NCBI GenBank assembly: GCA_000708835.1 | Contig: DF237281.1 | Coordinates: 1 to 64,000, forward strand | DNA length: 64,000 nucleotides | Origin: Klebsormidium nitens | Taxonomy: Eukaryota > Plantae > Klebsormidiophyceae | Direction: 5' to 3' | In this document: piece after piece, positions 2,060 through 13,165 of the stretch | Numbering within the stretch: the first letter of the stretch is position 1 | How the letters are laid out: each line of letters begins with the position of its first letter | Notes under the pieces: model-generated | What the model saw: only the letters and a program-made list of their open reading frames with translations | Database searches by the model: none | What the model was told of the DNA's origin: nothing | Translations under genes and position numbers: made by a program

Positions 2060-5000
2060 CTACAAATCACCCGAGTCAAATACGTCATTGTAAACCCCCT
2101 GTAGCTGCCCGCAGGTCTTGACATCTACCCCCATGTCTAACAAGCCTGACATTGCCGCCAGGAACGCCGTCTGGAAATCCGCACCAACCCGAGTGTTGTT
2201 GGACGTCCGACTGTCTGTAAATGTATCGTCGAGGTTTGGGCCCGCCACGAGCGCGCCGGTCACTAGGCCGAGCTGCGGGTTCGGCAGCCCTGGGAAGTAG
2301 CCGTTGAAGAAGTCGCACGGCTGGTTTGCGTCCGCCGGGCACGACGACTCGCGGTCCGGAATGCGGGTAGGCCGGTGGTAACCCTTGTTGCCGAACCCGA
2401 CGACATAGCTCCAACTGTCGGGGTACAGGAAATTGTCGCCCATCATGTACCGCATCTGGCCCAGGGCCCAGCACTTGAGGCCACGCTTCTGGTCCGTGTT
2501 CGTCTTGTTTGAGGTAGAATAGATTAGGGCGAGGAAGGAGGCCGCGGCGGCGTTGGGCAGGGGCGCGTCCTTGGTCCACGCGAGGGACAGGTCGGTCGAC
2601 CTGCAGGGACGGACGGGAGCACTTGGATCAGCTTTTGAAGGTTTTCGAAGAGCCTTAGGAATCGTCGTGATACACCGCTTTGCGTTCTGGACATGTAGCC
2701 CGGAGCTGACACGAAACCCCAAGATATCTGATGTTTGTCGTCCGCTTTTATTTCAGAGCAGGGATGCCTAGAGAAAGGACGAAGCAGAGAAGCAGGACGA
2801 CACGCAAGAGGATTTTGATCGGATTGTCAGGCTGGCTCGGAGCAATGCCACCCAAACAACTCAGATGCTTGTCCTTCATCTCAAAGGGTCATACATCCAA
2901 GCAGAACGAAACCACTGCCATACGACACTGCCATACGACACTGCCATAACCTCAAGTCCTCTTTCCCAGCCTCTCGTAAGCGGTCAGCAGAATAGCAGAA
3001 AACTGCCGCGCTGGATGCTTCTGAACATTGCATGAGTGCAGGCACTCACTGCACGGGCATGAAGGGGCAGTCGGGGTCCTCCATATCCGTCAGACCATCG
3101 CAGTCGTTGTCGCGCCCGTCGTTGCAGTTCTCCTCGAACGTTACCGCGAACGGGTCGGTAAGGATCACTGGGCCGGTGGCCCCGAGCGCGGCGTTCTTGA
3201 GCGCGAGCTGCGCGGCGACGAGCTTGGCCTCCTTTGTGGTGTTGCGGTCGGGGGTGCAGCCGTCGAAGACCAGGAACGACTGGTTGTTGAACGTCTGGAT
3301 GTTCTCCTTGATCATGTTCTGGTTCTTGACCGCCTGGGACGCCAGCTGCTTGGCCGCGAGCTGTGGGGAAAAGGACGGCTTCAGAAAGAGCTCTCGTCGG
3401 GGGCCAGTCTCAGGAATCTGTATGCCTTATATGACGGAAGTGTTTGCCGTGCACCATACTCTTTGAAGACCCGATTGAAAAGCAGACACGCTGTCGATGC
3501 GGCCAGAAAACCGGGCACCAGCGTCGAGGCAGATGATCACTCCGGATAAGATCCCTTCCTAACCGAGAAGACTTTAGTTGACTGGTCACAGACTCGGCTC
3601 GCCTTCCTTCAAGCGTAGAAAGGCTTGCGCATGCCCCGAATTCCAGAAAGTCACCATTGCGGAACTTCGAGATGTGGAATCATCCGTGTTCAGCAACGCC
3701 GTCGAAGCCCACCATCAAACGCCTTCCCTCTCAACAAATGACCAGATGCCGTTTCATTCCGGCAAACATCAAACGGCTTCCCTTTGCGCACTGTCACCCA
3801 GAAGCTTCCGCTGATGCTGAACAATACCCAGCATCCAGTCACCCTGACTAACGTACGTCTCAAGGTTTGCACGCATTGGACAGCCGGGCCAGCGCGCTTA
3901 CCACGTCGGGGCTGATCTTGGGCGGCGTAAGCTCGACCCAGGCGCGCAGGAAGGTGCGGATCTGCTCGTGGTACTGCGGCAGGTCGGTCACCCGGGCCAG
4001 CACGCTGGCGGCCGCCCAGACCGCGGTGTCGTAGTTGTACACGTAGTAACCCGCCTCCGTGTTCGCCTGCGCGCCCACTGCCTCGCGCGCCAGGTGCTGC
4101 GTCATGTAGAACTGCACAGGCACATCGAGGAAGATTAGGGTTTAGGAGTTTAGGTTAGGTTTGATTTTGGTTTCGGATCGTCCCCGCGGGCGAAGTCGGA
4201 GCGACAAGGAAGTGCTCAGGTTTTTGCACGCCTGTTGCAGTGGGGCGTGACTGTGGAATGACGTTCCCAAAACAATCGTCTGCGGCCGTAGGTCTCTCAC
4301 CAGACTTGTACTAATCTGCTGAAAGATTTCAAGTTCACTCCATGAATACCATGTGCTGTTCACTGTATCGCGCGCAGTCAGGTGCCGCTGATGCCGGTTG
4401 AGGTCAAGCTCTCAGAATATTTCCTGAGCTTTTCCCTGAAAACCCACTGGGCCCCGTAGCTTTTGAAACAAACAAACACGTCTCACAACGACCTTGTAAC
4501 GCACCTGCGCGTCCCCGAGATACCGCTCCTGCCCCGTCGCCAGGAACAGCGCCACGCCAGCCCACGAGAGGTCATCCAGCACCGTATGGCTGGGGTAAAA
4601 GTCGACGGGCACCGTCGTCTGCACCAGCTTCTGCTCCTGCTGCGCCAGCACGTTTTGCGGCAGGTTCAGGAACGGCGACACGTCGACGGTTTGGAGAAGC
4701 CGCCTGTTGCTGGGTGACACGTCATTTTCGAGGAGGCGTCGCGCGGGGAGCGTGGGTTCGGGCAGAACCGGGGCTGCTGTGACTACTGCTTTGACTGTGG
4801 GAACGGGCGTTGATGGAGCGGGCGTTGGCGGGGGCGCGCACGACGGGTCGAAGAAAGGCCCCACGCCGCCGACCATGACGTACAGCCCGTTGCAGCAGGC
4901 CGCTTTGTCATCGAAGCGGGTCTTCGAATCTGCAGAGGAAAGAAGGGAGCCCGGTAAGGTTTTGTTGCGGCAGGCTGCATGGTCAAGATGAGACCTGCGT

Positions 5001-8000
5001 GGTTAGGCGTGGTAAGGCGGGAGAGCAAAAGCTTTGAAATTCTAAAATGAGACTAAAATGCTAAAAACACTACAGGGACCAGCGATAGAAGAGCACACTC
5101 TAGCAAGACGTACTTGGCACTCCAAGCTGGCTTTTTCAGCGAGATTGTGCTCACTGCCGCTGGCCCAAATCAGTAACGCCTGCCGACCACCAATAAGAGC
5201 AACCACTTACAAACTAGGAATGGCTGATGAAGCTGCTTCACATTGGGCAGCACGACAGACGTCGAAAGCGCAGGATTTAATCGACTCGGAAAGGCGCAAC
5301 TCGAGACTGAGGCACTCACTGAAATCGGCGCACTTGGCATCCTCGAAACCGGGGAGCGCGGACGGCAAATTGATGCAGCGCTTTCCCGCAAGGTCGGCAA
5401 CCCAGCACGTGGATAGAGCGGTGTCTCCGCACAAGCCCCGGCCGGGGCTGTCGCTGTTGATGGCCCCTTTGGCCACGAGCGAGTTGCAGCACGTGAGCGC
5501 CGAGTCGAACTGGTCAGTCGCCCCTGCACAAGGGACAGGAGCGTTCCGGTGAGTAACAGCGACACGTTGGAACAAAGGGACGGGTTGACAGGAAACGTTC
5601 GTCAAGACATTGCTTTGCTAAGACTCCACCGAGTCTGTCGGGGAATGCATCTAGGTGCGGTTACCAACACCAGATGCTTGGATAAGACACTTGGAGTTCT
5701 TTGACTGACCGAACCTGGAACGAATTGAACACAAAAATTTCGAAACTTTGTCACTATAACCACCACCAGAAGACTCTTGCTCTCCAAGTGACAAAAGAAC
5801 CTGGGCATCTTACCAAATGCAGCACACTGCGATCCAGAAGTCGAGTTCAGCTGGACGCAGGAGCGCGAGACGGTGTTCGGCACGAAGCAGGTGGAGGGGC
5901 CCAGGGCGCAGACTCCACGTCCGGGCGCGGAGGCAGTGATTGCCTGGCTCTTGGTGAGCTGGTTGCAGCAGGACTCGGGGGTGGGGAAGAAGTCCTGGCC
6001 GAGACCGGTGCAGCCCTTGCCGGTATCCAGGCTGATGGTCTGGGTGAGGCAGTCGCGGGTCTGTAGCTGGGGGACGAAGCACTCGAACTGGCCTTCGGGA
6101 AGGGCGCATGCGCCCTGCAAATGAGGAGGGGACAAGACTTGGACATCTGGCATTTTTGTTTGAAGAAATCAGCGACTGTCTCCTTCAAAGTGGCATGGAC
6201 TTCGTACTAGGATCAGTAACGGGAATGGAAGAGTGGCAAGGTTAGACGAGAAACGAGGCTTAAAAAGCGGTCGTTGCAGGTGACTGGTGAGACTAGAGTT
6301 TTGTGAGACTAGAGTCTTGCAGGCTCACATCCTCCTTCCAGATGAACTCTGCTGAGACAAGCTTCGCTAGCTAGGAAGTGGACCAACGTGAGCAGCATCC
6401 TTCCGGTGCTTCAGCTTGATGCACACCAAGTCAGCTGAGCTCTGGAACGAATGGTCACCTGGGGAGTCGTCTGGTTCTGCCACACCCCTGCCGAGCGCAT
6501 GAATGCGCAGCAGCTGCTGCGGCGCGTGTAGACCGGCGCCGTCTGGGCCGCGTTCAGGCACAGCCCCTCGTCCTTCAGGAACCCGCACGTGGCCAGCGGG
6601 AAGTCAGGCACCCAGCACTTGATCTCGGCGGGGTCCAGGTTCGCGCTCGCGGGGAGCGGCACGACAGGCACCATCTTCGCCTTGGACACCGTCGTTCCGC
6701 ACGGGACGAATGCGCAGTACGACTGCTCTTGCCCCGGGGTGGACTTCGCGAGCGTGAACAGGGTTTCGGCGCCCTGGAGGAAGCTGTCGGCCTGCTGCGT
6801 GTTGCCAGAGTTGCGCACGAGGACCGACGACAGCGCGAGGGCGGCCGCGCTCTCGGCGAGGAGGTCGACACCGACGTGCGTGCTGTCGAGGATGTACGCT
6901 TGGCGGGCTGTGCCGAGGTTAGGGTCATTCTGGAGGCGCGTCCAGATGGAGCCCAGCGAGGGGGCGTCACCCTCAGTGAGGTATTTGGTTGGGTCGCCCA
7001 CCTGGTCAAGAGGAAACTTGCGAGTGAGGTCTTGGCTTGAAAGCACAAGGCTTCTCTGGGCGAAAGCCGCGGTTCAATTGCTAATATGTCCAGATAATAA
7101 ACCACTATGAGGATATCATTTTAGGTGGCTACACAATGCATCTAATGGCACACAATTCAGGCAGGTGCTTCAGATACCTAGTCTGCCAGCTTGAGATCGT
7201 GGGAGAAGGAGTTCCAACTTATCAAACATGTCCAACGAAGACCATGGACGTCAGCCGGAATGGATATCACTCAGCTTTGCAAGAAAGCTCGCGAAGAGTT
7301 GTATCTCTAAAGTGGCACGATTTTCTGCTGCATCAGTATCCAAGGAAGAGAACGAGGCACGAAGCGCTGATGGTCGCACTGAGATAGATCACGGTACGTG
7401 ACAATATGCTGCTCAAGGGCGCATGTTCGGTCCGGAATAGCGCACCTGGGCGACGAAGACGGAATTGGTCGGATCCCAGTTGTTCAGGATGTAGGTCCCG
7501 GCTGCAACCACGTTCTGTAGCGACTGGTCGAAGACCTCCGCATCCTTGTAGCCCTGAGGGAACTCCAGCATGCTCCAGGCCAGGAGAGAAGCGCTGGTGG
7601 CCAGGGGCATCCCGTACTTGACCGGGTCGCTGCCGATAAGCCACCCTCCCGTGACGTCCTTCTGAGAAGCGGTGCCGTTGCTAATGGCGGCGATGTCTTG
7701 GAAGGAAGCCGCGTTGGTCCTCTGCAACGAAGAGGATCGGGTGTGTCAAACTCCACGTCCCGACCAAGCCACTGAGCACAGTGCACAGGTGCTGCAACCA
7801 ACTTCCGCCCCGCTTTCAGGACTTTATCCAACATTTAAGAGACCTTCAGCACTGCCCGCCGTCAAGTCGCCAGCTCAGACTCAAAGCCCTGAATCTTCTT
7901 TGCGAACTCACAACCCTCCCCAACCCTGAATCATCTCAGACCTGGTGTCTTGTAGGAGGGGCTCAACCAGACTTCTCACCAGCTGCGACAGGTAGCTCCC

Positions 8001-11000
8001 GGCCTTGAACGTTGCTTCCTTCATGTTGAAGTCGACGGGTACAGTGGCCCACAGCAAGACGACAGCGCCCAGCAACGTCAGTGTTCCCAGGAACTGCCCC
8101 CACGCGGCGGCTTTTCTGAAGGGCTTGCCGGACGTGAATGAATAGACGACAAACAGGAAGGGTGCGATGGAATTGTACAGCGCCCAGAACAGGGGCAGGC
8201 CGACGTAGGGCGAGAGGCTGACGTAGCGCGCACCGCGTCCGCCTGCCGGCGTGGTAGCTGTGCGCCAGATGGCCATGCCCACGACCTGGAAGGGGCACAG
8301 ACGCACTTAAGAAGCGATTGATGCGCTCAGCTTCTTGACTCTCTCGAACTGTCTGACTAAATGCGGCATCAGTTGGAAGTTCGTGCAGAGAGTCTAGGGT
8401 CCAGAGAACCTTCGTGCTACATTTTACGGCACTCTTTGCTTCTTGTACATTCCTCCTAAACTCGACTGCTGAGGAAGACACCCGTCGATCTAGGAAAATG
8501 CTAGCACTCAAAAGTCCCTGCATCATTGTCACCAGCTTGCAGCCCGCCTTGTACACCGTTTGTTAGCGTCCATAATCGCCTCGTACACCGTCCGTACACT
8601 GTCTTAGCAATTCCACGAGGAGAACACTCACCGCCAGGCAGAAGCCGAGCATGATGTACAGCACCGTGGGGTCCAGCACGCCCCCCACGTCCACCAGATT
8701 CTTCGCCACGAAGATGGACGCAAACCGCTTGTACCACGGCGCGCGCTTCGGGGGGAGCGGGCGGCTCTCTGAGAGGAGCGGCTCTGTTTCCCGGGGGTTG
8801 TTCACGACCACCGTCAGATTCACAGGGCCTCCGGGAGTCCCCACAACCGACACGCCACTGCTATCCTGGGACTGAAGCGGGCTGTACGGAGCGGGGGGTG
8901 CCCGTTCGCCGGAGGGCGTAGCCCCCCCCGGCTGAAACTCGTGCACCGAGGTAGGGGTGGCTCCCGGAGTGGGGGCATCAGCCTTCTCGACGCTCGCGTA
9001 GGTGACCCCCTCAAAAGGACGGGGCGGGGGGGCGTCCCGGCGGCGGCTGCTGACGCGGGAAAGGACGCGGTTGAACCCGCGCTGGACAGCGGCCAAGGGG
9101 AGGGCGAGCGCTGTCTCGGCGACCTAAGAGCAGATGAAGGACGGAGTTTTCTGGAGCTTTCAGAGGAGGTGCCACGTGAGTAGAAAAGGTGTTGCCCAAA
9201 AGGAGGTGCAGGGGACGCTCTTACGATGGATCTTTCATATAGAATCTTGAGGTTGAGGGATCAACTTTGGAGCAATGATTTCGTAGACCATGCCTACCAC
9301 TCCGTCTACACTACAGATCTTGGGGTTTAAAACACGACCCCAGGAGCCAGACAGCAAGAAGTCTTCTCGACATTAAGCACTGCCTCCGCTCGGGACGCCT
9401 TACCTTCTTCTCCGTGACCTTGAAGCCAACGCCGCCCTTGAGCCCGAACTTGGACAACAGCACGTTGATGACGGCCTTGGTGTAGGTGAACCAGAGGACC
9501 GTGTTGCTGATGTTGGCAAACCACAGCGACTTGATGTGCGCCAGCCGGTGGAAGTAGGTCTGGACAAGGAAGATTGCCAGGTAGTACATGGTGGCCCCTG
9601 CCGCAAACCAGTAGTTGATGATCACGGGGTTAAGGCCGAAACCCAGGGACAGGAACGGGATGAGGAGCGAGACGGGGGTCGCGATCACGTTCACGATGTA
9701 GCTCCAGGTGCCGTACGAGTACCACAGCTTCTGGAAGATGCTCAGGCGCCACTGCGTGAGGGGGCTGTACTTCCAACTGAAGAACACCTGCAGCAGGACG
9801 GAAGAGGCGATTTCGTCTCAAATGGCTTGACAGTGCCGAGATAACCCTGCTTTCAGCAAAAGCATCAATCAGCCAGTCGAATCTTGCAATGGATGATTCC
9901 AAGCAGAATCGTGCGGCATCTTCCACTGTACTTTAATATCCTCAGGGAAAAAGCTGTTTCCTCCAGGGCGCTCGCCATGCACAATTGGTGTCTGCGCAGC
10001 GTGAGGGCAAAGAAAGTGTTGCATCTAGTATCATGAAGAATCCGCAGCGCCCCGATTGCCAGATCGACGTTCACCTGCATGTGGCCCTTGCACCAGCGGC
10101 TGCGCTGCCGCATAACGTTGCGGACCTCATCGGGCGCTTCTCCTTCGGCAATGTAGTCCAGCAGGTATGAACCCTTGTAGCCATGCTTCTTGAGCTCCAT
10201 ACCCAGGGCGTAGTCCTCCGTAATGGTGTACTGGAGAGGTGACATTGGCATGGCGTCAGGAGGCAATCAGTGCGGCAAGAGGGAACAGGCGACTGCTGTA
10301 TTCCTTCAGGTGCCCCTCCTGCTGGTTGCGGGGCGTTCTCAGGTTGAACACGTGCAATATTGCCATAGACTGTGCGTAATTGCCTGACTGGAGACCTTGA
10401 GGGGTGGCCACCGAAGGCATGCCAAACATTGTGAGCAATATTTAGGGAAAAAAGAGAGTAGGAAGGACTCACAGTGGGGAAGAACTTGCAGTGCGCCAGA
10501 GGTCTGGCGCGGATGGCAAAGTTGGTCCCTGTGCACGCGATGTAACCCCAGGCGACGGCACCGGGTAGCCAGTACTCCCAGAACTGGAGGTTGATGTTGT
10601 TGAAGAGGTCCGCGCCAGGATGGATATTGTGAAAGGCCTAAAAGACAAAGGTAAGTTGTGAGTATCTGCGTTCCTATTGTACAATGTCACAGCAATTTCC
10701 CCAGTTGATGAGCAAGTTGACAGTTTCTAATATCAGGAAGATCTGAACCATGCCAAAGCGCCCAACGTTCCGCTACAGATGTTGAGAACACAGTGCTTGA
10801 CTTTCAAACTTACCTGGGGTGATAGGCAAAGAGCGTATTTGGGGTTTGTGAGAGGCTCCAGGATGCGCAGGAAGAAGTGCTTCTTGGCCACCATATCCGC
10901 ATCGAAAACCACAATGATCTCAGTCTCTGGGATCTTCTCCCAGCTGATCTCCTTTGTCCCAGGATACCGGTAACTGCAGGAGAACCAACAGCAATTGTGC

Positions 11001-13165
11001 TTATTTTCGCTTTCAAGGATAAGTACTTGGATCATGAGGATACGAGGGGAAGCAGCTGTAGCTATCAAAGCTTTTTAACACAACTCTCAGAACATCATGC
11101 TTAGTCAATCCTTTGAGCACACGGTGTGCAAACTTACTCTTTGTAGATTACGTTCATGAGGCAGTTGTTGAGGTTGCTAGACTTTCCATTTGTGTCCTTA
11201 GGAATCTTTTTCCGGCCACTGACATACTCCACGTCCCTGCCCTCAGCCGCCAGCTGCTCAATAAACACCTTTTTGGGCTCCTCATTGCCTGCGCAAACAA
11301 CCAAATGCCTCTTAGAACTCGCGAAGCTGACTACACAAAGAGCGACGCTTGATGAGAACCAAATCAAATTAGAAACTGCTAGGCAGTTGCTCTGGCTGCC
11401 ATTCTGCCTAAGCTAGATAAATTCTTTAGTAGGGTGTCAGTATATCACTGAAGCAGTAACAAACAGGCATAGACAAGACCATAAAGCATGGAAACCTGGG
11501 TCTTTGATAGGCTTACCATCATCGCAAAGATACACGGTCCTCTTTGCCCCCATTGGGAGATCAGCGTTTAGGGCCCCCATCACCGTTGGCTTTATGACGC
11601 TCATATCCTCCTTGTAACAGGGAATTAGAACCCGCACATGGAAACTGCAAGGTGACCAAACTGCTCATGAGCCTCCTACCATCTGCAGTACGTGCACAAG
11701 TGCCACCAGGAAATTGCTCACAAATACTGCCTGTCATCATTCAGGTTGCTCTTACTTCATCTTGCATTGCCACCGACATGTCGCTTGGGAAGGTTTTCGC
11801 ACGAACGTGGTACAATGATCGTATGGATATAGCAGCTCACTTGAAACGCTCGGTTGAATTCAGCCCTTCCTCCTCAGCTGGTAGCCCAGTGGCACTCCCT
11901 TTGGGAACAAGGCTGATGGTGAGGAGAATGGCATAGGGCAGAGTGGCAGAGAGCCCTAGGAACTCAACCACAAGAACCACGATTCCATACCTGTTGGAAA
12001 GAAAGGGCTCGTTTGACCACACCAAGTATGTGGGGTTGATGTTCAATCCCTGTCTACCATTTTGAGTTTTAGGGTTTAGATCACTCCTTTGCAGAAAGAA
12101 GCGACGTCTGAAAGATTCTAGCTCTTGACCTCGTTACTTTCTCGTGTACATTGCTGCAGCTGCATACAGAAGGCCACCTTGCAATCTTGCCCTTTCAAGA
12201 GAGAGTGGGGACATGTGTGGTTGGAGAGAGATTTTGCTGCCAAAAACTAGAGTTCAAACTTACGCAAAGACTGGGCCAGTCACGAGTGTCTTCGTGATGC
12301 GGACGTAAAAGTAGAAGGCGGCGGCACAGAGGTAGAAGATCAGGAGTAAAACTGGCACAAAGTTGACCTTGATGTGCAGTGGTGTCCTGACTGGCATCTT
12401 GTACTGCAATCAGCAAGCACAAAGTCTTTGAGGAGACAGGAGAGATGAACAAAGCCTTCAGGAACGAAGTGGAAAACACTCCTGCGAAGCAAATGGTAGG
12501 AAGCAGGTATTGCAACATGGAGCTTGGGACATTCTTAATCAGTAACAGAGCGCGGCATCCTGCATTATGCAGACAATTATCCAAATCCAGGTTTCACTTT
12601 CGTGTTAGGCAGTCTCGACATCAGAATGGACTGAAAGTGCAGTGCAATGCACACCTGCGAGAGGTACTCGGCAACAGCCTCTGGAGAAGCATTGGGGACC
12701 ATAGGCCTTGTAGGCCTTTCCTCCTCTTCATCGATCTCAGAGGTAGGACCATCGAAGGGTACTGCCGGCCTGTGAGGACCACAAAGTGACAAGACATCAG
12801 CGATGTCGGGAAAGGCTTACTTCAGCAAAGTACAGATGGGGCACTCTGTGCAGCTTGGAAACTGCACGGCTCGAAGGACCAGACAATAATCATATGCGCA
12901 GGCTTTTGTGTCTAGAGGCCTCACAAGGTAGCAGAACACTGGTAAGTGAAGCAACTCCTCATGTTACTGATTTTGTTCAGCACATTGCAGTCTTCTTGAA
13001 AGTAGTGGCGGCAGATCTGCTGGTTCGAAGGAGAGCCATATGACTCTGGGAAAAGGACCCGTTTCCATACCTTCCAAACCGGACATGGGGTCCATTTCCC
13101 CGAGGGGCATTCCTGCCATTCCTCTGGTTCATGAGCTCCAAATCCATCGCGTTCTGGCCTCGCAT
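2060..13165 (-). CDS. Bacterial-type GT2 processive beta-glucan (cellulose synthase-like) synthase fused to a C-terminal GH9-like domain; 20 exons, ~1750 aa
   Basis: Hand-built exons, all GT-AG and phase-compatible: 13165-13071, 12769-12655, 12403-12264, 11990-11841, 11644-11517, 11288-11138, 10973-10814, 10637-10473, 10230-10075, 9787-9404, 9123-8632, 8285-7980, 7721-7446, 7001-6459, 6114-5814, 5523-5320, 4929-4505, 4111-3902, 3360-3050, 2600-2060 (5253 nt, single stop TAG at 2062-2060). GT2 motifs: IPCYKE, LCDDG, GKSSNLN, FDAD, SPQAFHN, TED, QRSRW, FKVTEK. GH9 motifs: DVTGGW...VKYGMP, VGD, DLLAESAAALA, DDLSWAGVALFLATG, QMRYMMGDN, SYVVGFG, GALVAGP. Confidence 0.88.
2913..2948. repeat. Short intronic tandem repeat, 13-bp unit x ~2.8
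   Basis: cactgccatacga cactgccatacga cactgccata, inside the last intron of the fusion gene. Confidence 0.8.
4830..6625 (-). repeat. Four tandem ~63-aa six-cysteine protein repeats inserted in the GH9-like domain
   Basis: Spliced repeats: CWVPDFPLATC..C..YTRRSSCC..C, CFVPQLQTRDC..C..FPTPESCC..C, CFVPNTVSRSC..C..FDSALTCC..C, CWVADLAGKRC..C..FDDKAACC..C. Spacing C-x9-C and [FY]-x5-CC-x17/18-C is conserved. Confidence 0.85.
9404..12403 (-). other. GT2 synthase core of the fusion gene (TM1-2, catalytic domain, TM3-4, gating loop)
   Basis: Canonical D,D,D,QxxRW signature (DDG at ~11520, DAD at ~10900, TED at ~10215, QRSRW at ~10100) and an FxVTxK gating-loop motif at ~9410-9425. The layout is compact and BcsA-like, with no plant CESA RING finger or P-CR/CSR inserts visible. 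Confidence 0.92.

What the first reader, a model, noticed from the sequence alone, without database searches (positions are those of the whole stretch)
2160..7660. The fused GH9 domain looks like a pseudo-enzyme: catalytic acid, one base aspartate and the conserved His are lost
Seen in sequence: GGWYDAGDH is GGWLIGSDP (~7624-7650; first Asp lost, second kept), PHHR is IPDR (~2350-2365), and the acid-catalyst motif NEVAxDYNA is TRVGADFQT (Glu to Arg, codon 2191-2189). Structural and aromatic blocks (SYVVGFG, GALVAGP, DDLSWA) are retained. Established: inverting GH9 enzymes need this Glu and the DAGD aspartates, and the tunicate GH6 domain is likewise reported to lack catalytic residues. Inference: the barrel may bind, guide or crystallise the emerging glucan, or scaffold terminal complexes, rather than cut it.
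Basis: partly seen in the sequence, partly recalled or inferred. Interest (0 to 1): 0.8.

Follow-up and report, generated by a model that had tools for sequence, protein, structure and literature searches.

The report
Dead GH9 domain on algal synthase
A green-alga gene joins a cellulose-synthase-like enzyme to an outward-facing cellulase (GH9) fold that has lost its cutting residues yet is expressed and kept by selection, and most related green-algal fusions share this, so the fold probably does a job other than cutting.

Summary
On the minus strand, eight GT-AG exons (7721-2060) encode an intact 936-aa GH9-like domain that ends a GT2 (cellulose-synthase-like) gene. Spliced contigs from four studies confirm all seven introns.

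Alignment to solved GH9 enzymes shows these changes:
- DAGD is IGSD: the first Asp is Ile32, the second (Asp35) is kept.
- HHR is PDR.
- The acid Glu is Arg894 (codon 2191-2189).
- Further substrate-site residues are also gone (DH His, W313/R317/Y318 equivalents, Y420).

The domain is not decaying. An ortholog (81% aa identity) has the same exons and motifs, with dN/dS 0.18 (95% CI 0.13-0.23) over the barrel.

The loss is family-wide. GT2-GH9 fusions occur across Chlorophyceae and Trebouxiophyceae, and nearly all lack the Glu (Arg most often). A few (Bryopsis, Elliptochloris) keep the full catalytic set. Scaffold positions stay conserved, and no new conserved acid appears.

A clade relative folds confidently as a GH9 barrel. 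The window's own spliced protein has no reference, so it was not folded.

"Pseudo-enzyme" is well supported. What the barrel does instead (glucan handling or scaffold) is still inference. I found no paper describing the fusion. The closest analogue is the inactive GH6 domain of tunicate CesA.

The parts
7446..7721 (-). GH9 exon 1 (aa 1-92). Holds the degenerate DAGD motif GGWLIGSDP at 7640-7614: Ile32 at 7628-7626, retained Asp35 at 7619-7617.
   Evidence: Gene model. Pfam PF00759 44.6 bits, HMM 41-118. PDB alignments. Spliced contigs.
6459..7001 (-). GH9 exon 2 (aa 93-273). Holds VGDP...W (DH histidine lost) and the AESAAALA helix, then the start of the first 6-Cys module.
   Evidence: (37.2 bits, HMM 117-197).
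5814..6114 (-). Exon 3 (aa 274-374): a Cys-rich module inside insert 1.
   Evidence: 95% aa identity to the ortholog over this exon.
5320..5523 (-). Exon 4 (aa 374-441): a Cys-rich module inside insert 1.
4505..4929 (-). Exon 5 (aa 442-583). Holds the last Cys module and a Pro-rich linker, then returns to the barrel (FYPS...DDLSWAG; the FY tyrosine is retained).
   Evidence: (HMM 201-242).
3902..4111 (-). Exon 6 (aa 584-653): barrel helices. The WD-motif Trp is replaced by Tyr (NYDTAVW).
3050..3360 (-). Exon 7 (aa 654-757): insert 2, with CNDGRDNDCDGLTDMEDPDC. It lies just before the loop that normally carries W313/R317/Y318.
   Evidence: (weak PF11617 hit).
2060..2600 (-). Exon 8 (aa 757-936 plus stop at 2062-2060). 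Holds SYVVGFG, IPDR (2362-2351), GALVAGP, TRVGADFQT with Arg894 at the acid position (2191-2189), and the conserved C-terminal CGQLQGVY tail.
   Evidence: (62.1 bits, HMM 320-440).
7981..8306 (-). Upstream exon with the last two hydrophobic segments. It ends about 20 residues before the barrel and ties the GH9 domain to the membrane part of the synthase.
   Evidence: ORF translations, hydropathy, splice junction read from the sequence.
9404..12385 (-). GT2 (cellulose-synthase-like) exons with intact motifs YLCDDG, VVFDADMV, TEDYALG, QRSRW and FKVTEKK. Exon borders here are approximate.
   Evidence: tblastn with P0115/P0187. ORFs. An X16 contig runs 2.9 kb 5' of the GH9 part.

Best explanation
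This is the C-terminal, outward-facing GH9-fold domain of a GT2 beta-glycan (cellulose-type) synthase of a chlorophyte green alga. It can no longer hydrolyse by the GH9 inverting mechanism. The general acid Glu is Arg, one of the two water-activating Asp is Ile, and the signature His and much of the -2 to +1 sugar-binding set are replaced.

The barrel itself is kept by purifying selection and is expressed on the same transcript as the synthase.

The most likely mechanism is inferred, not shown. The barrel is tethered about 20 residues after the last membrane helix, so it stands beside the exit of the translocation channel. There it would act as a non-hydrolytic module that holds or organises the nascent chain or wall polymer, or the synthase array. 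In this lineage its former catalytic face has been rebuilt into a platform that carries four 6-Cys modules and a second Cys-containing insert.

Shown: residue losses, splicing and expression, selection, family-wide pattern, intact fold in a relative, intact GT2 motifs.
Inferred: outside topology, lack of activity, any binding or organising role.
For: - Residue replacements are fixed by alignment to solved GH9 enzymes and by block HMMs.
- The 936-aa ORF is intact across 8 exons. All 7 introns are confirmed by 100%-identical spliced contigs in 4 runs from 4 studies, and one contig extends 2.9 kb into the GT2 part.
- The ortholog in L001 has the same 8 exons, the same intron phases and the same motifs (GGWLLGSDP, VPDR, TRIGADYQT). 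It shows 80.7% aa identity and dN/dS 0.159 overall; over the barrel core dN/dS is 0.177 (bootstrap 95% CI 0.133-0.231) with dS about 0.9.
- Family level: 45 of the 159 sequences tabulated (the 150 nearest representatives plus nine members of their clusters) carry Arg at the Glu position. Named GT2-GH9 fusions from Raphidocelis, Tetradesmus, Monoraphidium, Haematococcus, Chlamydomonas spp., Coccomyxa, Trebouxia, Apatococcus, Myrmecia and Symbiochloris lack the Glu. Bryopsis, Elliptochloris, P0084 and P0032 keep D, D, H, W, R and E.
- Tree: three starred clades (30, 8 and 14 rows) contain no Glu-bearing sequence. All 40 Glu-bearing rows fall in the remaining group.
- The columns lost in the degenerate set are the active-site ones. 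Scaffold columns stay conserved at 75-100%.
- No newly conserved acidic column was found.
- A clade relative (P0197 domain) folds with pLDDT 87 and pTM 0.92, and matches GH9 crystal structures with TM 0.91.
- GT2 motifs are intact.
- 31 of 39 fused proteins have three hydrophobic segments between the FxxTxK motif and the GH9 domain, as the window does.
- The domain has 34 Cys and 7 N-x-S/T sequons.
Against: - No biochemical data exist for any member.
- The second Asp (the Cel9A D58 equivalent) is kept. In the window and its ortholog an Asp (839) replaces the second His, so a non-canonical acid/base pair cannot be excluded without coordinates.
- The window's own spliced protein could not be folded because it has no reference. 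The tool returns no coordinates, so cleft geometry was not examined.
- Loss of the aromatic and Arg sugar-binding residues argues against canonical glucan binding in the cleft, so the 'binds the chain' step is weak.
- The outside topology rests on crude hydropathy, homology to BcsA and Cys content.
- The polymer made by the GT2 is not established as cellulose.
- dS near 0.9 is close to saturation, though that would tend to raise the dN/dS estimate, not lower it.
Confidence: 0.6

Rival explanations
1. The barrel is purely a protein scaffold. It mediates lateral contacts that assemble synthases into linear terminal complexes, or it merely displays the Cys-rich modules. The barrel itself does not contact the glycan.
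For: - Most canonical sugar-contact residues are replaced.
- Both large inserts sit on the former catalytic face, right next to the FY and W313 positions.
- The Cys-module exons are among the best conserved between the two species, e.g. 95% aa identity for exon 3.
- Former active-site positions vary between clades: R, T, S, W, Q, V or A at the Glu position.
Against: - Clades without any insert (Trebouxiophyceae, Tetradesmus or Monoraphidium type, about 500-aa domains) still keep the barrel.
- Arg at the acid position recurs in many lineages, and Pro/Asn at the R317/Y318 positions are fixed within the window's clade. This hints at a new constraint in the cleft, not indifference.
Confidence: 0.25
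2. The domain is still an enzyme, a hydrolase or transglycosylase. It would use non-canonical residues (for example retained Asp35 with Asp839), or act on another polymer, possibly a charged one that Arg894 could bind.
For: - Asp35 (second DAGD Asp) is conserved in 6 of 7 members of the window's clade with that region.
- Asp839 is shared with the ortholog.
- Purifying selection is strong.
- Some GH9 members act on non-cellulosic substrates; a glucosaminidase and a xanthanase are among the fold matches.
Against: - Asp839 is His or Gln in the other clade members.
- No acidic column is newly conserved in the clade or the wider degenerate set.
- The acid position itself varies (R, K, Q, A) within the clade.
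- The water-activating Asp pair is broken, and in most other clades both Asp are gone.
Confidence: 0.1
3. The GH9 part is a decaying remnant or an annotation artefact, with no function.
For: Many conserved GH9 residues are lost. Two large insertions interrupt the barrel.
Against: - The ORF is intact and all splice sites are canonical in two species.
- The spliced transcript appears in four studies.
- dN/dS is 0.18 with an upper CI of 0.23.
- Scaffold residues are conserved across two green-algal classes.
- A relative folds confidently as a barrel.
Confidence: 0.02

Closest known systems
Tunicate cellulose synthase CesA (GT2 fused to a C-terminal GH6 domain)
   Same: Both are a single polypeptide with a GT2 synthase followed by a cellulase-family domain that lacks a key catalytic residue and is regarded as non-functional as a hydrolase (PMC10334666). 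The GT2 parts are detectably related: GT2-GH6 proteins, including that of Styela clava, were hit at E 1e-51 to 1e-65 with 33-38% identity. According to earlier scan notes, stand-alone cellulase genes exist elsewhere in this genome (not checked here), which would resemble Ciona GH6-1.
   Different: - The hydrolase fold differs: a GH9 (alpha/alpha)6 barrel here, GH6 there.
- The host is a green alga, not an animal.
- The GH9 version occurs as a large, old family in which catalytically intact and dead paralogs both exist.
- The window's lineage adds Cys-rich inserts on the catalytic face.
KORRIGAN1 (plant GH9A1), the membrane endoglucanase of the cellulose synthase complex
   Same: Both are a GH9 barrel held at the outer face of the plasma membrane next to a cellulose synthase. 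[quoted passage not shown]
   Different: - KOR1 is a separate type II membrane protein. It keeps its catalytic residues, and its activity matters: the jia1 allele abolishes endoglucanase activity (cited in PMC8774047).
- Here the GH9 is fused in cis to the C-terminus of a bacterial-type GT2, and its catalytic residues are replaced.
Bacterial BcsZ/CMCax (GH8 endoglucanase of bcs operons)
   Same: Both are a cellulase-type (alpha/alpha)6 protein genetically coupled to a BcsA-type GT2 synthase (from general knowledge).
   Different: BcsZ is a separate periplasmic protein of family GH8, not GH9, and is catalytically active. No fusion and no loss of catalytic residues.
Chitinase-like lectins (GH18 pseudo-enzymes such as YKL-40)
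   Same: Both show a glycoside-hydrolase fold kept under selection after replacement of the catalytic acid, and reused for non-catalytic roles (from general knowledge).
   Different: - The fold and family differ.
- Chi-lectins keep their sugar-binding aromatic residues, whereas much of the GH9 sugar-binding set is also lost here.
- Chi-lectins are not fused to a synthase.

Membership tests
Glycoside hydrolase family 9 (Pfam PF00759), structural membership | Sequence match to the family profile above the curated cut-off, covering the barrel in order | tested here: met
   Exon pieces score 44.6, 37.2 and 62.1 bits against a cut-off of 27.7. A fourth scores 22.9 bits. Together they cover HMM 41-118, 117-197, 201-242 and 320-440 in order. 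E-values to solved GH9 chains reach 6e-13 and 4e-11.
Glycoside hydrolase family 9 (Pfam PF00759), structural membership | (alpha/alpha)6 barrel fold | tested here: inconclusive
   Tested only on a clade relative, P0197:567-1076, which is about 30-34% identical to the window. It gave pLDDT 87.2, pTM 0.92 and TM 0.91 to 3WC3/8IHX/1KS8. The window's own spliced protein has no reference and was not folded.
GH9 as an active inverting endoglucanase | General acid Glu in the NEVxxDYN motif (PROSITE signature 2) | tested here: not met
   Arg894 (CGG, 2191-2189) aligns with the Glu, and no Asp or Glu lies within 3 residues either side. The ortholog also has Arg.
GH9 as an active inverting endoglucanase | Both Asp of DAGD (Cel9A D55 and D58; PMC4221708) | tested here: not met
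   The motif is IGSD. The first Asp is Ile32 (Leu in the ortholog). The second Asp is kept as Asp35.
GH9 as an active inverting endoglucanase | Signature-1 His in [PLIVM]-H-x-R | tested here: not met
   I-P-D-R: the His is Pro838 and the next His is Asp839. Caveat: the loop is 3 residues longer and His833 lies upstream.
Pseudo-enzyme (non-catalytic homolog kept by selection) | Essential catalytic residues missing while the fold-determining residues are conserved | tested here: met
   In the column-by-column comparison of 40 Glu-bearing and 47 fused Glu-less domains, the lost columns are the active-site ones. Scaffold columns stay at 75-100%.
Pseudo-enzyme (non-catalytic homolog kept by selection) | Expressed and under purifying selection | tested here: met
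   Spliced contigs in 4 studies. dN/dS 0.177, 95% CI 0.133-0.231.
Pseudo-enzyme (non-catalytic homolog kept by selection) | Absence of catalytic activity shown biochemically | not testable with these tools
   Needs recombinant protein assays.
Tunicate-type CesA (GT2 plus C-terminal inactive GH6) | GT2 with D, DxD, TED and QxxRW motifs on the same polypeptide | tested here: met
   YLCDDG, VVFDADMV, TEDYALG and QRSRW are present. One transcript contig spans both parts.
Tunicate-type CesA (GT2 plus C-terminal inactive GH6) | The C-terminal hydrolase domain is GH6 (PF01341) | tested here: not met
   The domain is GH9 (PF00759), with no GH6 hit. It works like the tunicate protein but is not a member.
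KORRIGAN-type GH9A | Stand-alone type II membrane protein with a catalytically competent GH9 | tested here: not met
   The domain is fused to the C-terminus of a GT2, and catalytic residues are replaced.

The most novel reading that the evidence does not exclude
In core chlorophyte algae the synthase-cellulase partnership, known in trans from land plants (CESA-KOR1) and bacteria (BcsA-BcsZ), exists as a cis fusion. In this fusion the GH9 barrel was neofunctionalised long ago. Arg took the place of the acid Glu and the cleft face was rebuilt, in some lineages with Cys-rich modules. The result would be a non-hydrolytic clamp or chaperone that controls how the nascent glucan leaves the channel and assembles into microfibrils or linear terminal complexes. 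Paralogs that keep the catalytic residues (Bryopsis, Elliptochloris) would be the ancestral, cutting form. The family would then offer a natural experiment on whether hydrolysis or mere binding is what cellulose synthesis needs from its cellulase.
Probability: 0.3. Interest if true: 0.8.

Novelty: new variant of a known kind. Interest (0 to 1): 0.66.

Why it matters
Why cellulose synthases need a cellulase partner (KOR1 in plants, BcsZ in bacteria, the dead GH6 in tunicates) is a long-standing open question. So is which enzymes make cellulose in chlorophyte algae, which lack plant-type CESA rosettes.

This locus belongs to a widespread chlorophyte family in which a BcsA-like GT2 is fused to an outward-facing GH9 barrel. 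Most members, including this one, have lost the catalytic machinery under continued selection, while a few keep it.

That supplies matched 'alive' and 'dead' natural variants for testing whether cutting or only binding and organising is required. It also flags database names such as 'cellulase' for these proteins as probably wrong. In the searched paper library I found no description of the fusion or of its pseudo-enzyme state.

Tried and rejected
- **Folding or database-searching the window's own spliced 936-aa protein.** It has no reference, because the introns give stops in any window reference, and I did not type it in. The step was left out. A clade relative (P0197:567-1076) was folded instead.
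- **Metagenome scan with the last exon.** It gave only one 35%-identical locus (L003), which was of no use. The first attempt failed on a frame error and was corrected.
- **The look-up of encoding contigs for P0004.** No DNA was returned, and the contig starts at the ORF, so no N-terminal part could be recovered.
- **One-piece hmmalign of the whole domain.** The large inserts made it drop the N-terminal two thirds. It was replaced by three block HMMs.
- **Paper searches.** Searches for a GT2-GH9 or CesA-GH9 fusion in algae found nothing relevant. A search for Cel9A residue numbers found only an indirect citation (PMC4221708).
- **Organism identity.** It could not be established because run names are coded. 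Nearest relatives place it among chlorophycean green algae.
- **Decay or pseudogene reading.** Rejected on dN/dS, the intact ORF and expression.
- **A family-wide compensating acid.** Rejected because no acidic column is newly conserved.
- **Composition of 36-48 kb of the window.** Checked for repeats, with nothing notable.

Full report
**What is there**

The stretch 2060-7721 lies on the minus strand of a multi-exon eukaryotic gene. Reading the sequence and joining eight exons at canonical GT-AG sites gives an uninterrupted 936-codon reading frame. The exons are 7721-7446, 7001-6459, 6114-5814, 5523-5320, 4929-4505, 4111-3902, 3360-3050 and 2600-2060, and the frame ends at TAG 2062-2060.

All seven introns are confirmed to the base. 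Spliced, 100%-identical contigs occur in four public runs from four different studies. Depth is high over exons and near zero over introns. One 5,980-nt contig continues 2.9 kb further 5'.

Upstream exons (about 12385-7981) encode a BcsA-like GT2 with intact YLCDDG, VVFDADMV, TEDYALG and QRSRW motifs and an FKVTEKK gating-loop-like motif. The GH9 part is therefore the C-terminal domain of a cellulose-synthase-like fusion protein, and it is expressed.

**Check of the observation**

Three exon pieces match Pfam PF00759 above its cut-off, and a fourth scores just below it. Together they cover the profile in order. HMMER alignments to solved GH9 enzymes (3WC3/8IHx, 8U49, 1KS8, 1JS4) give these correspondences:
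- TGGWLIGSDPVKYG lies opposite TGGWYDAGDHVKFG.
- IPDR lies opposite (P)HHR.
- NNTRVGADFQT lies opposite (x)NEVANDYNA.

The flanking anchors have identical spacing, so the register is fixed for the Asp pair and for the Glu. Ile32 replaces the first Asp and Asp35 keeps the second. The two Asp and the Glu are the accepted catalytic residues of GH9 (PMC4221708, citing work on T. fusca Cel9A).

The His assignment is slightly less firm. The loop is three residues longer than usual and carries His833 upstream.

Also gone are the DH histidine, the Trp/Arg/Tyr trio of the WGSxRY loop (gap/Pro/Asn), the Tyr before the acid, and the Trp of the WD motif, which is now Tyr. My naming of these as Cel9A H125, W313, R317, Y318 and Y420 is from memory.

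**Is it decaying?**

No. A JGI metagenome contig (L001) carries an ortholog with the same eight exons, the same intron positions and phases, an intact frame and the same motif states: GGWLLGSDP, VPDR, TRIGADYQT. Amino-acid identity is 80.7%.

Nei-Gojobori dN/dS is 0.159 overall and 0.15-0.19 in every sub-region. Over the 450 barrel codons it is 0.177, with a bootstrap 95% CI of 0.133-0.231 and dS about 0.9.

**The wider family**

An exhaustive profile-free search with the last exon found 463 relatives. The nearest ones share the loss. Of the 159 sequences tabulated (the 150 nearest representatives plus nine members of their clusters), 45 have Arg at the Glu position. This goes together with gap/Pro/Asn at the WGSxRY positions and Gln, Pro or Ala at the signature His.

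A word search with the GT2 part of one fused relative returned full-length GT2-GH9 fusions from many annotated green algae:
- Chlorophyceae: Raphidocelis, Tetradesmus, Monoraphidium, Haematococcus, Chlamydomonas sp. UWO241, C. eustigma, C. euryale.
- Trebouxiophyceae: Coccomyxa, Trebouxia, Apatococcus, Myrmecia, Symbiochloris, Elliptochloris.

UniRef labels several of these 'cellulase'.

Every fused protein whose C-terminal block could be aligned lacks the Glu, which is replaced by R, T, S, W, Q, V, A or I, and most have also lost one or both Asp. The exceptions are Bryopsis (P0123), Elliptochloris (P0211), P0084 and P0032, which keep the full D, D, H, W, R, E set.

In a tree built with the diagnostic columns removed, the Glu-less fused domains form three starred clades of 30, 8 and 14 rows with no Glu-bearing member. 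All 40 Glu-bearing rows sit in the remaining group. The root is not inferred, so a single ancient loss is plausible but not proven. The window groups (99*) with its ortholog, Haematococcus, Chlamydomonas sp. UWO241 and three unnamed sequences.

A column-by-column comparison shows that the positions conserved in Glu-bearing GH9 but lost in the fused Glu-less set are just the active-site ones: D, A, D of DAGD; DH; W of WD; W, G, R of WGSxR; HH; the second G of GGP; E; DY of DYNA. Scaffold positions remain 75-100% conserved. No acidic column is newly conserved, either family-wide or in the window's clade.

**Fold**

The window's spliced protein has no reference, so I did not hand it to the structure tool. 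I folded the closest complete insert-free clade member (P0197:567-1076) with a 76-row alignment. It gave pLDDT 87.2 and pTM 0.92. Its best matches are GH9 crystal structures, with TM 0.91 normalised to 3WC3, 8IHX and 1KS8. So the barrel survives the loss of the catalytic set in this clade. The tool returns no coordinates, so the cleft itself could not be inspected.

**Anatomy bearing on mechanism**

- The barrel starts about 20 residues after the last hydrophobic segment.
- Between the FxxTxK motif and the GH9 domain there are three hydrophobic segments in the window and in 31 of 39 fused relatives. In BcsA, from general knowledge, that motif is cytosolic and precedes two helices.
- The extra helix, the 34 Cys and the 7 N-glycosylation sequons all point to an outside location. 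This is inference.
- The two large lineage-specific inserts enter immediately before the FY(206)-S loop and immediately before the W313 loop. These are aa 196-545 (four 6-Cys modules plus a Pro-rich linker) and aa 653-757 (with a weak MopE-like Cys motif). Both therefore sit on the face that forms the active site in canonical GH9.

**Interpretation**

I hold with high confidence (about 0.85) that the domain is a GH9-fold pseudo-enzyme maintained by selection.

What it does is inferred. I favour (about 0.6 including the above) a non-hydrolytic role at the channel exit: holding or organising the nascent chain, wall polymer or synthase array through a rebuilt catalytic face.

The rivals are:
- A pure protein scaffold (0.25). 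This is favoured by the loss of sugar-contact residues. It is opposed by retention of the barrel in insert-free clades and by recurrent Arg and Pro/Asn states.
- Residual non-canonical catalysis using Asp35 and Asp839 (0.1). This is weakened because Asp839 is not conserved beyond the ortholog.
- Decay (0.02).

**Comparison with what is known**

The closest analogue is tunicate CesA, a GT2 fused to a GH6 domain that lacks a catalytic Asp and is considered functionless (PMC10334666). The present case works like it but fails membership because the fold is GH9.

KORRIGAN1 is a GH9 in the plant synthase complex, but it is separate and catalytically active (PMC8774047).

Five searches of the paper library for a GT2-GH9 fusion or a cellulose synthase with a GH9 domain in algae found nothing. 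Absence from this library does not prove absence from the literature.

I rate this a new variant of a known kind: a dead cellulase domain on a cellulose synthase, here with a different fold, in a different kingdom, and as a large old family with both live and dead members.

**Limits**

- There is no biochemistry, and no 3D model of the window's own protein.
- The organism name is coded; chlorophycean affinity comes from relatives only.
- The selection estimate rests on one ortholog pair with dS near 0.9.
- The tree used the quick search and is unrooted.
- The topology rests on crude hydropathy.
- Notes from the scan that other GH9 genes exist elsewhere in this genome were not checked.

Noticed in passing
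Proteins P0214-P0220; relates to the window's GT2 part at about 9404-12385: The GT2 part of the chlorophyte GT2-GH9 fusions also retrieves GT2-GH6 fusions (33-38% identity, E 1e-51 to 1e-65), including the tunicate Styela clava CesA. A PilZ-type bacterial BcsA scores only E 8e-25. The search's length filter excluded short bacterial CesA, so nothing can be said about the donor of the tunicate gene, but the shared 'GT2 plus C-terminal cellulase-fold' architecture deserves a proper tree.
   Followed up: no
window 2113-2090 (aa 920-927, CGQLQGVY) and Cys800 (KCWALGQ) in exon 8: A C-terminal tail motif C-x(4)-G-[VLI]-[YF] follows the barrel. Its Cys and Cys800 are each 100% conserved in the fused Glu-less set, against 87% and 55% in Glu-bearing GH9. 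This probably marks an extra disulfide specific to the fused family.
   Followed up: partly
window 6459-4505 (aa 196-545) and 3360-3050 (aa 653-757): Both large inserts of this lineage enter loops that flank canonical active-site residues, so they sit on the former catalytic face. The inserts are four 6-Cys modules plus a Pro-rich linker, and a module with CNDGRDNDCDGLTDMEDPDC (weak PF11617 hit). The same inserts occur in Haematococcus, Chlamydomonas sp. UWO241 and C. eustigma relatives, and in P0003/P0004.
   Followed up: partly
window 8563-9096, minus strand: A long Ser/Pro/Ala-rich, probably cytosolic, linker lies between the FKVTEKK motif and the last three hydrophobic segments. Its length varies strongly among relatives: the whole span from the FxxTxK motif to the GH9 start runs from about 70 to more than 850 residues.
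   Followed up: no
L001:10870-12096 (minus strand of the locus): The ortholog contig carries an ARC6-like plastid-division gene (PF13355) just downstream of the GH9 end. This fits a photosynthetic eukaryote. The window has only 2 kb on that side, so synteny was not checked.
   Followed up: no
elsewhere in this genome (scan notes s1-267615, s1-351073, s1-351152): Earlier first-stage notes report other GH9 genes in this genome: one with a tandem 8-Cys C-terminal module, and intronless plant-type copies in a giant-virus-like segment. If real and catalytically intact, they would parallel Ciona GH6-1 beside the dead GH6 of CesA.
   Followed up: no
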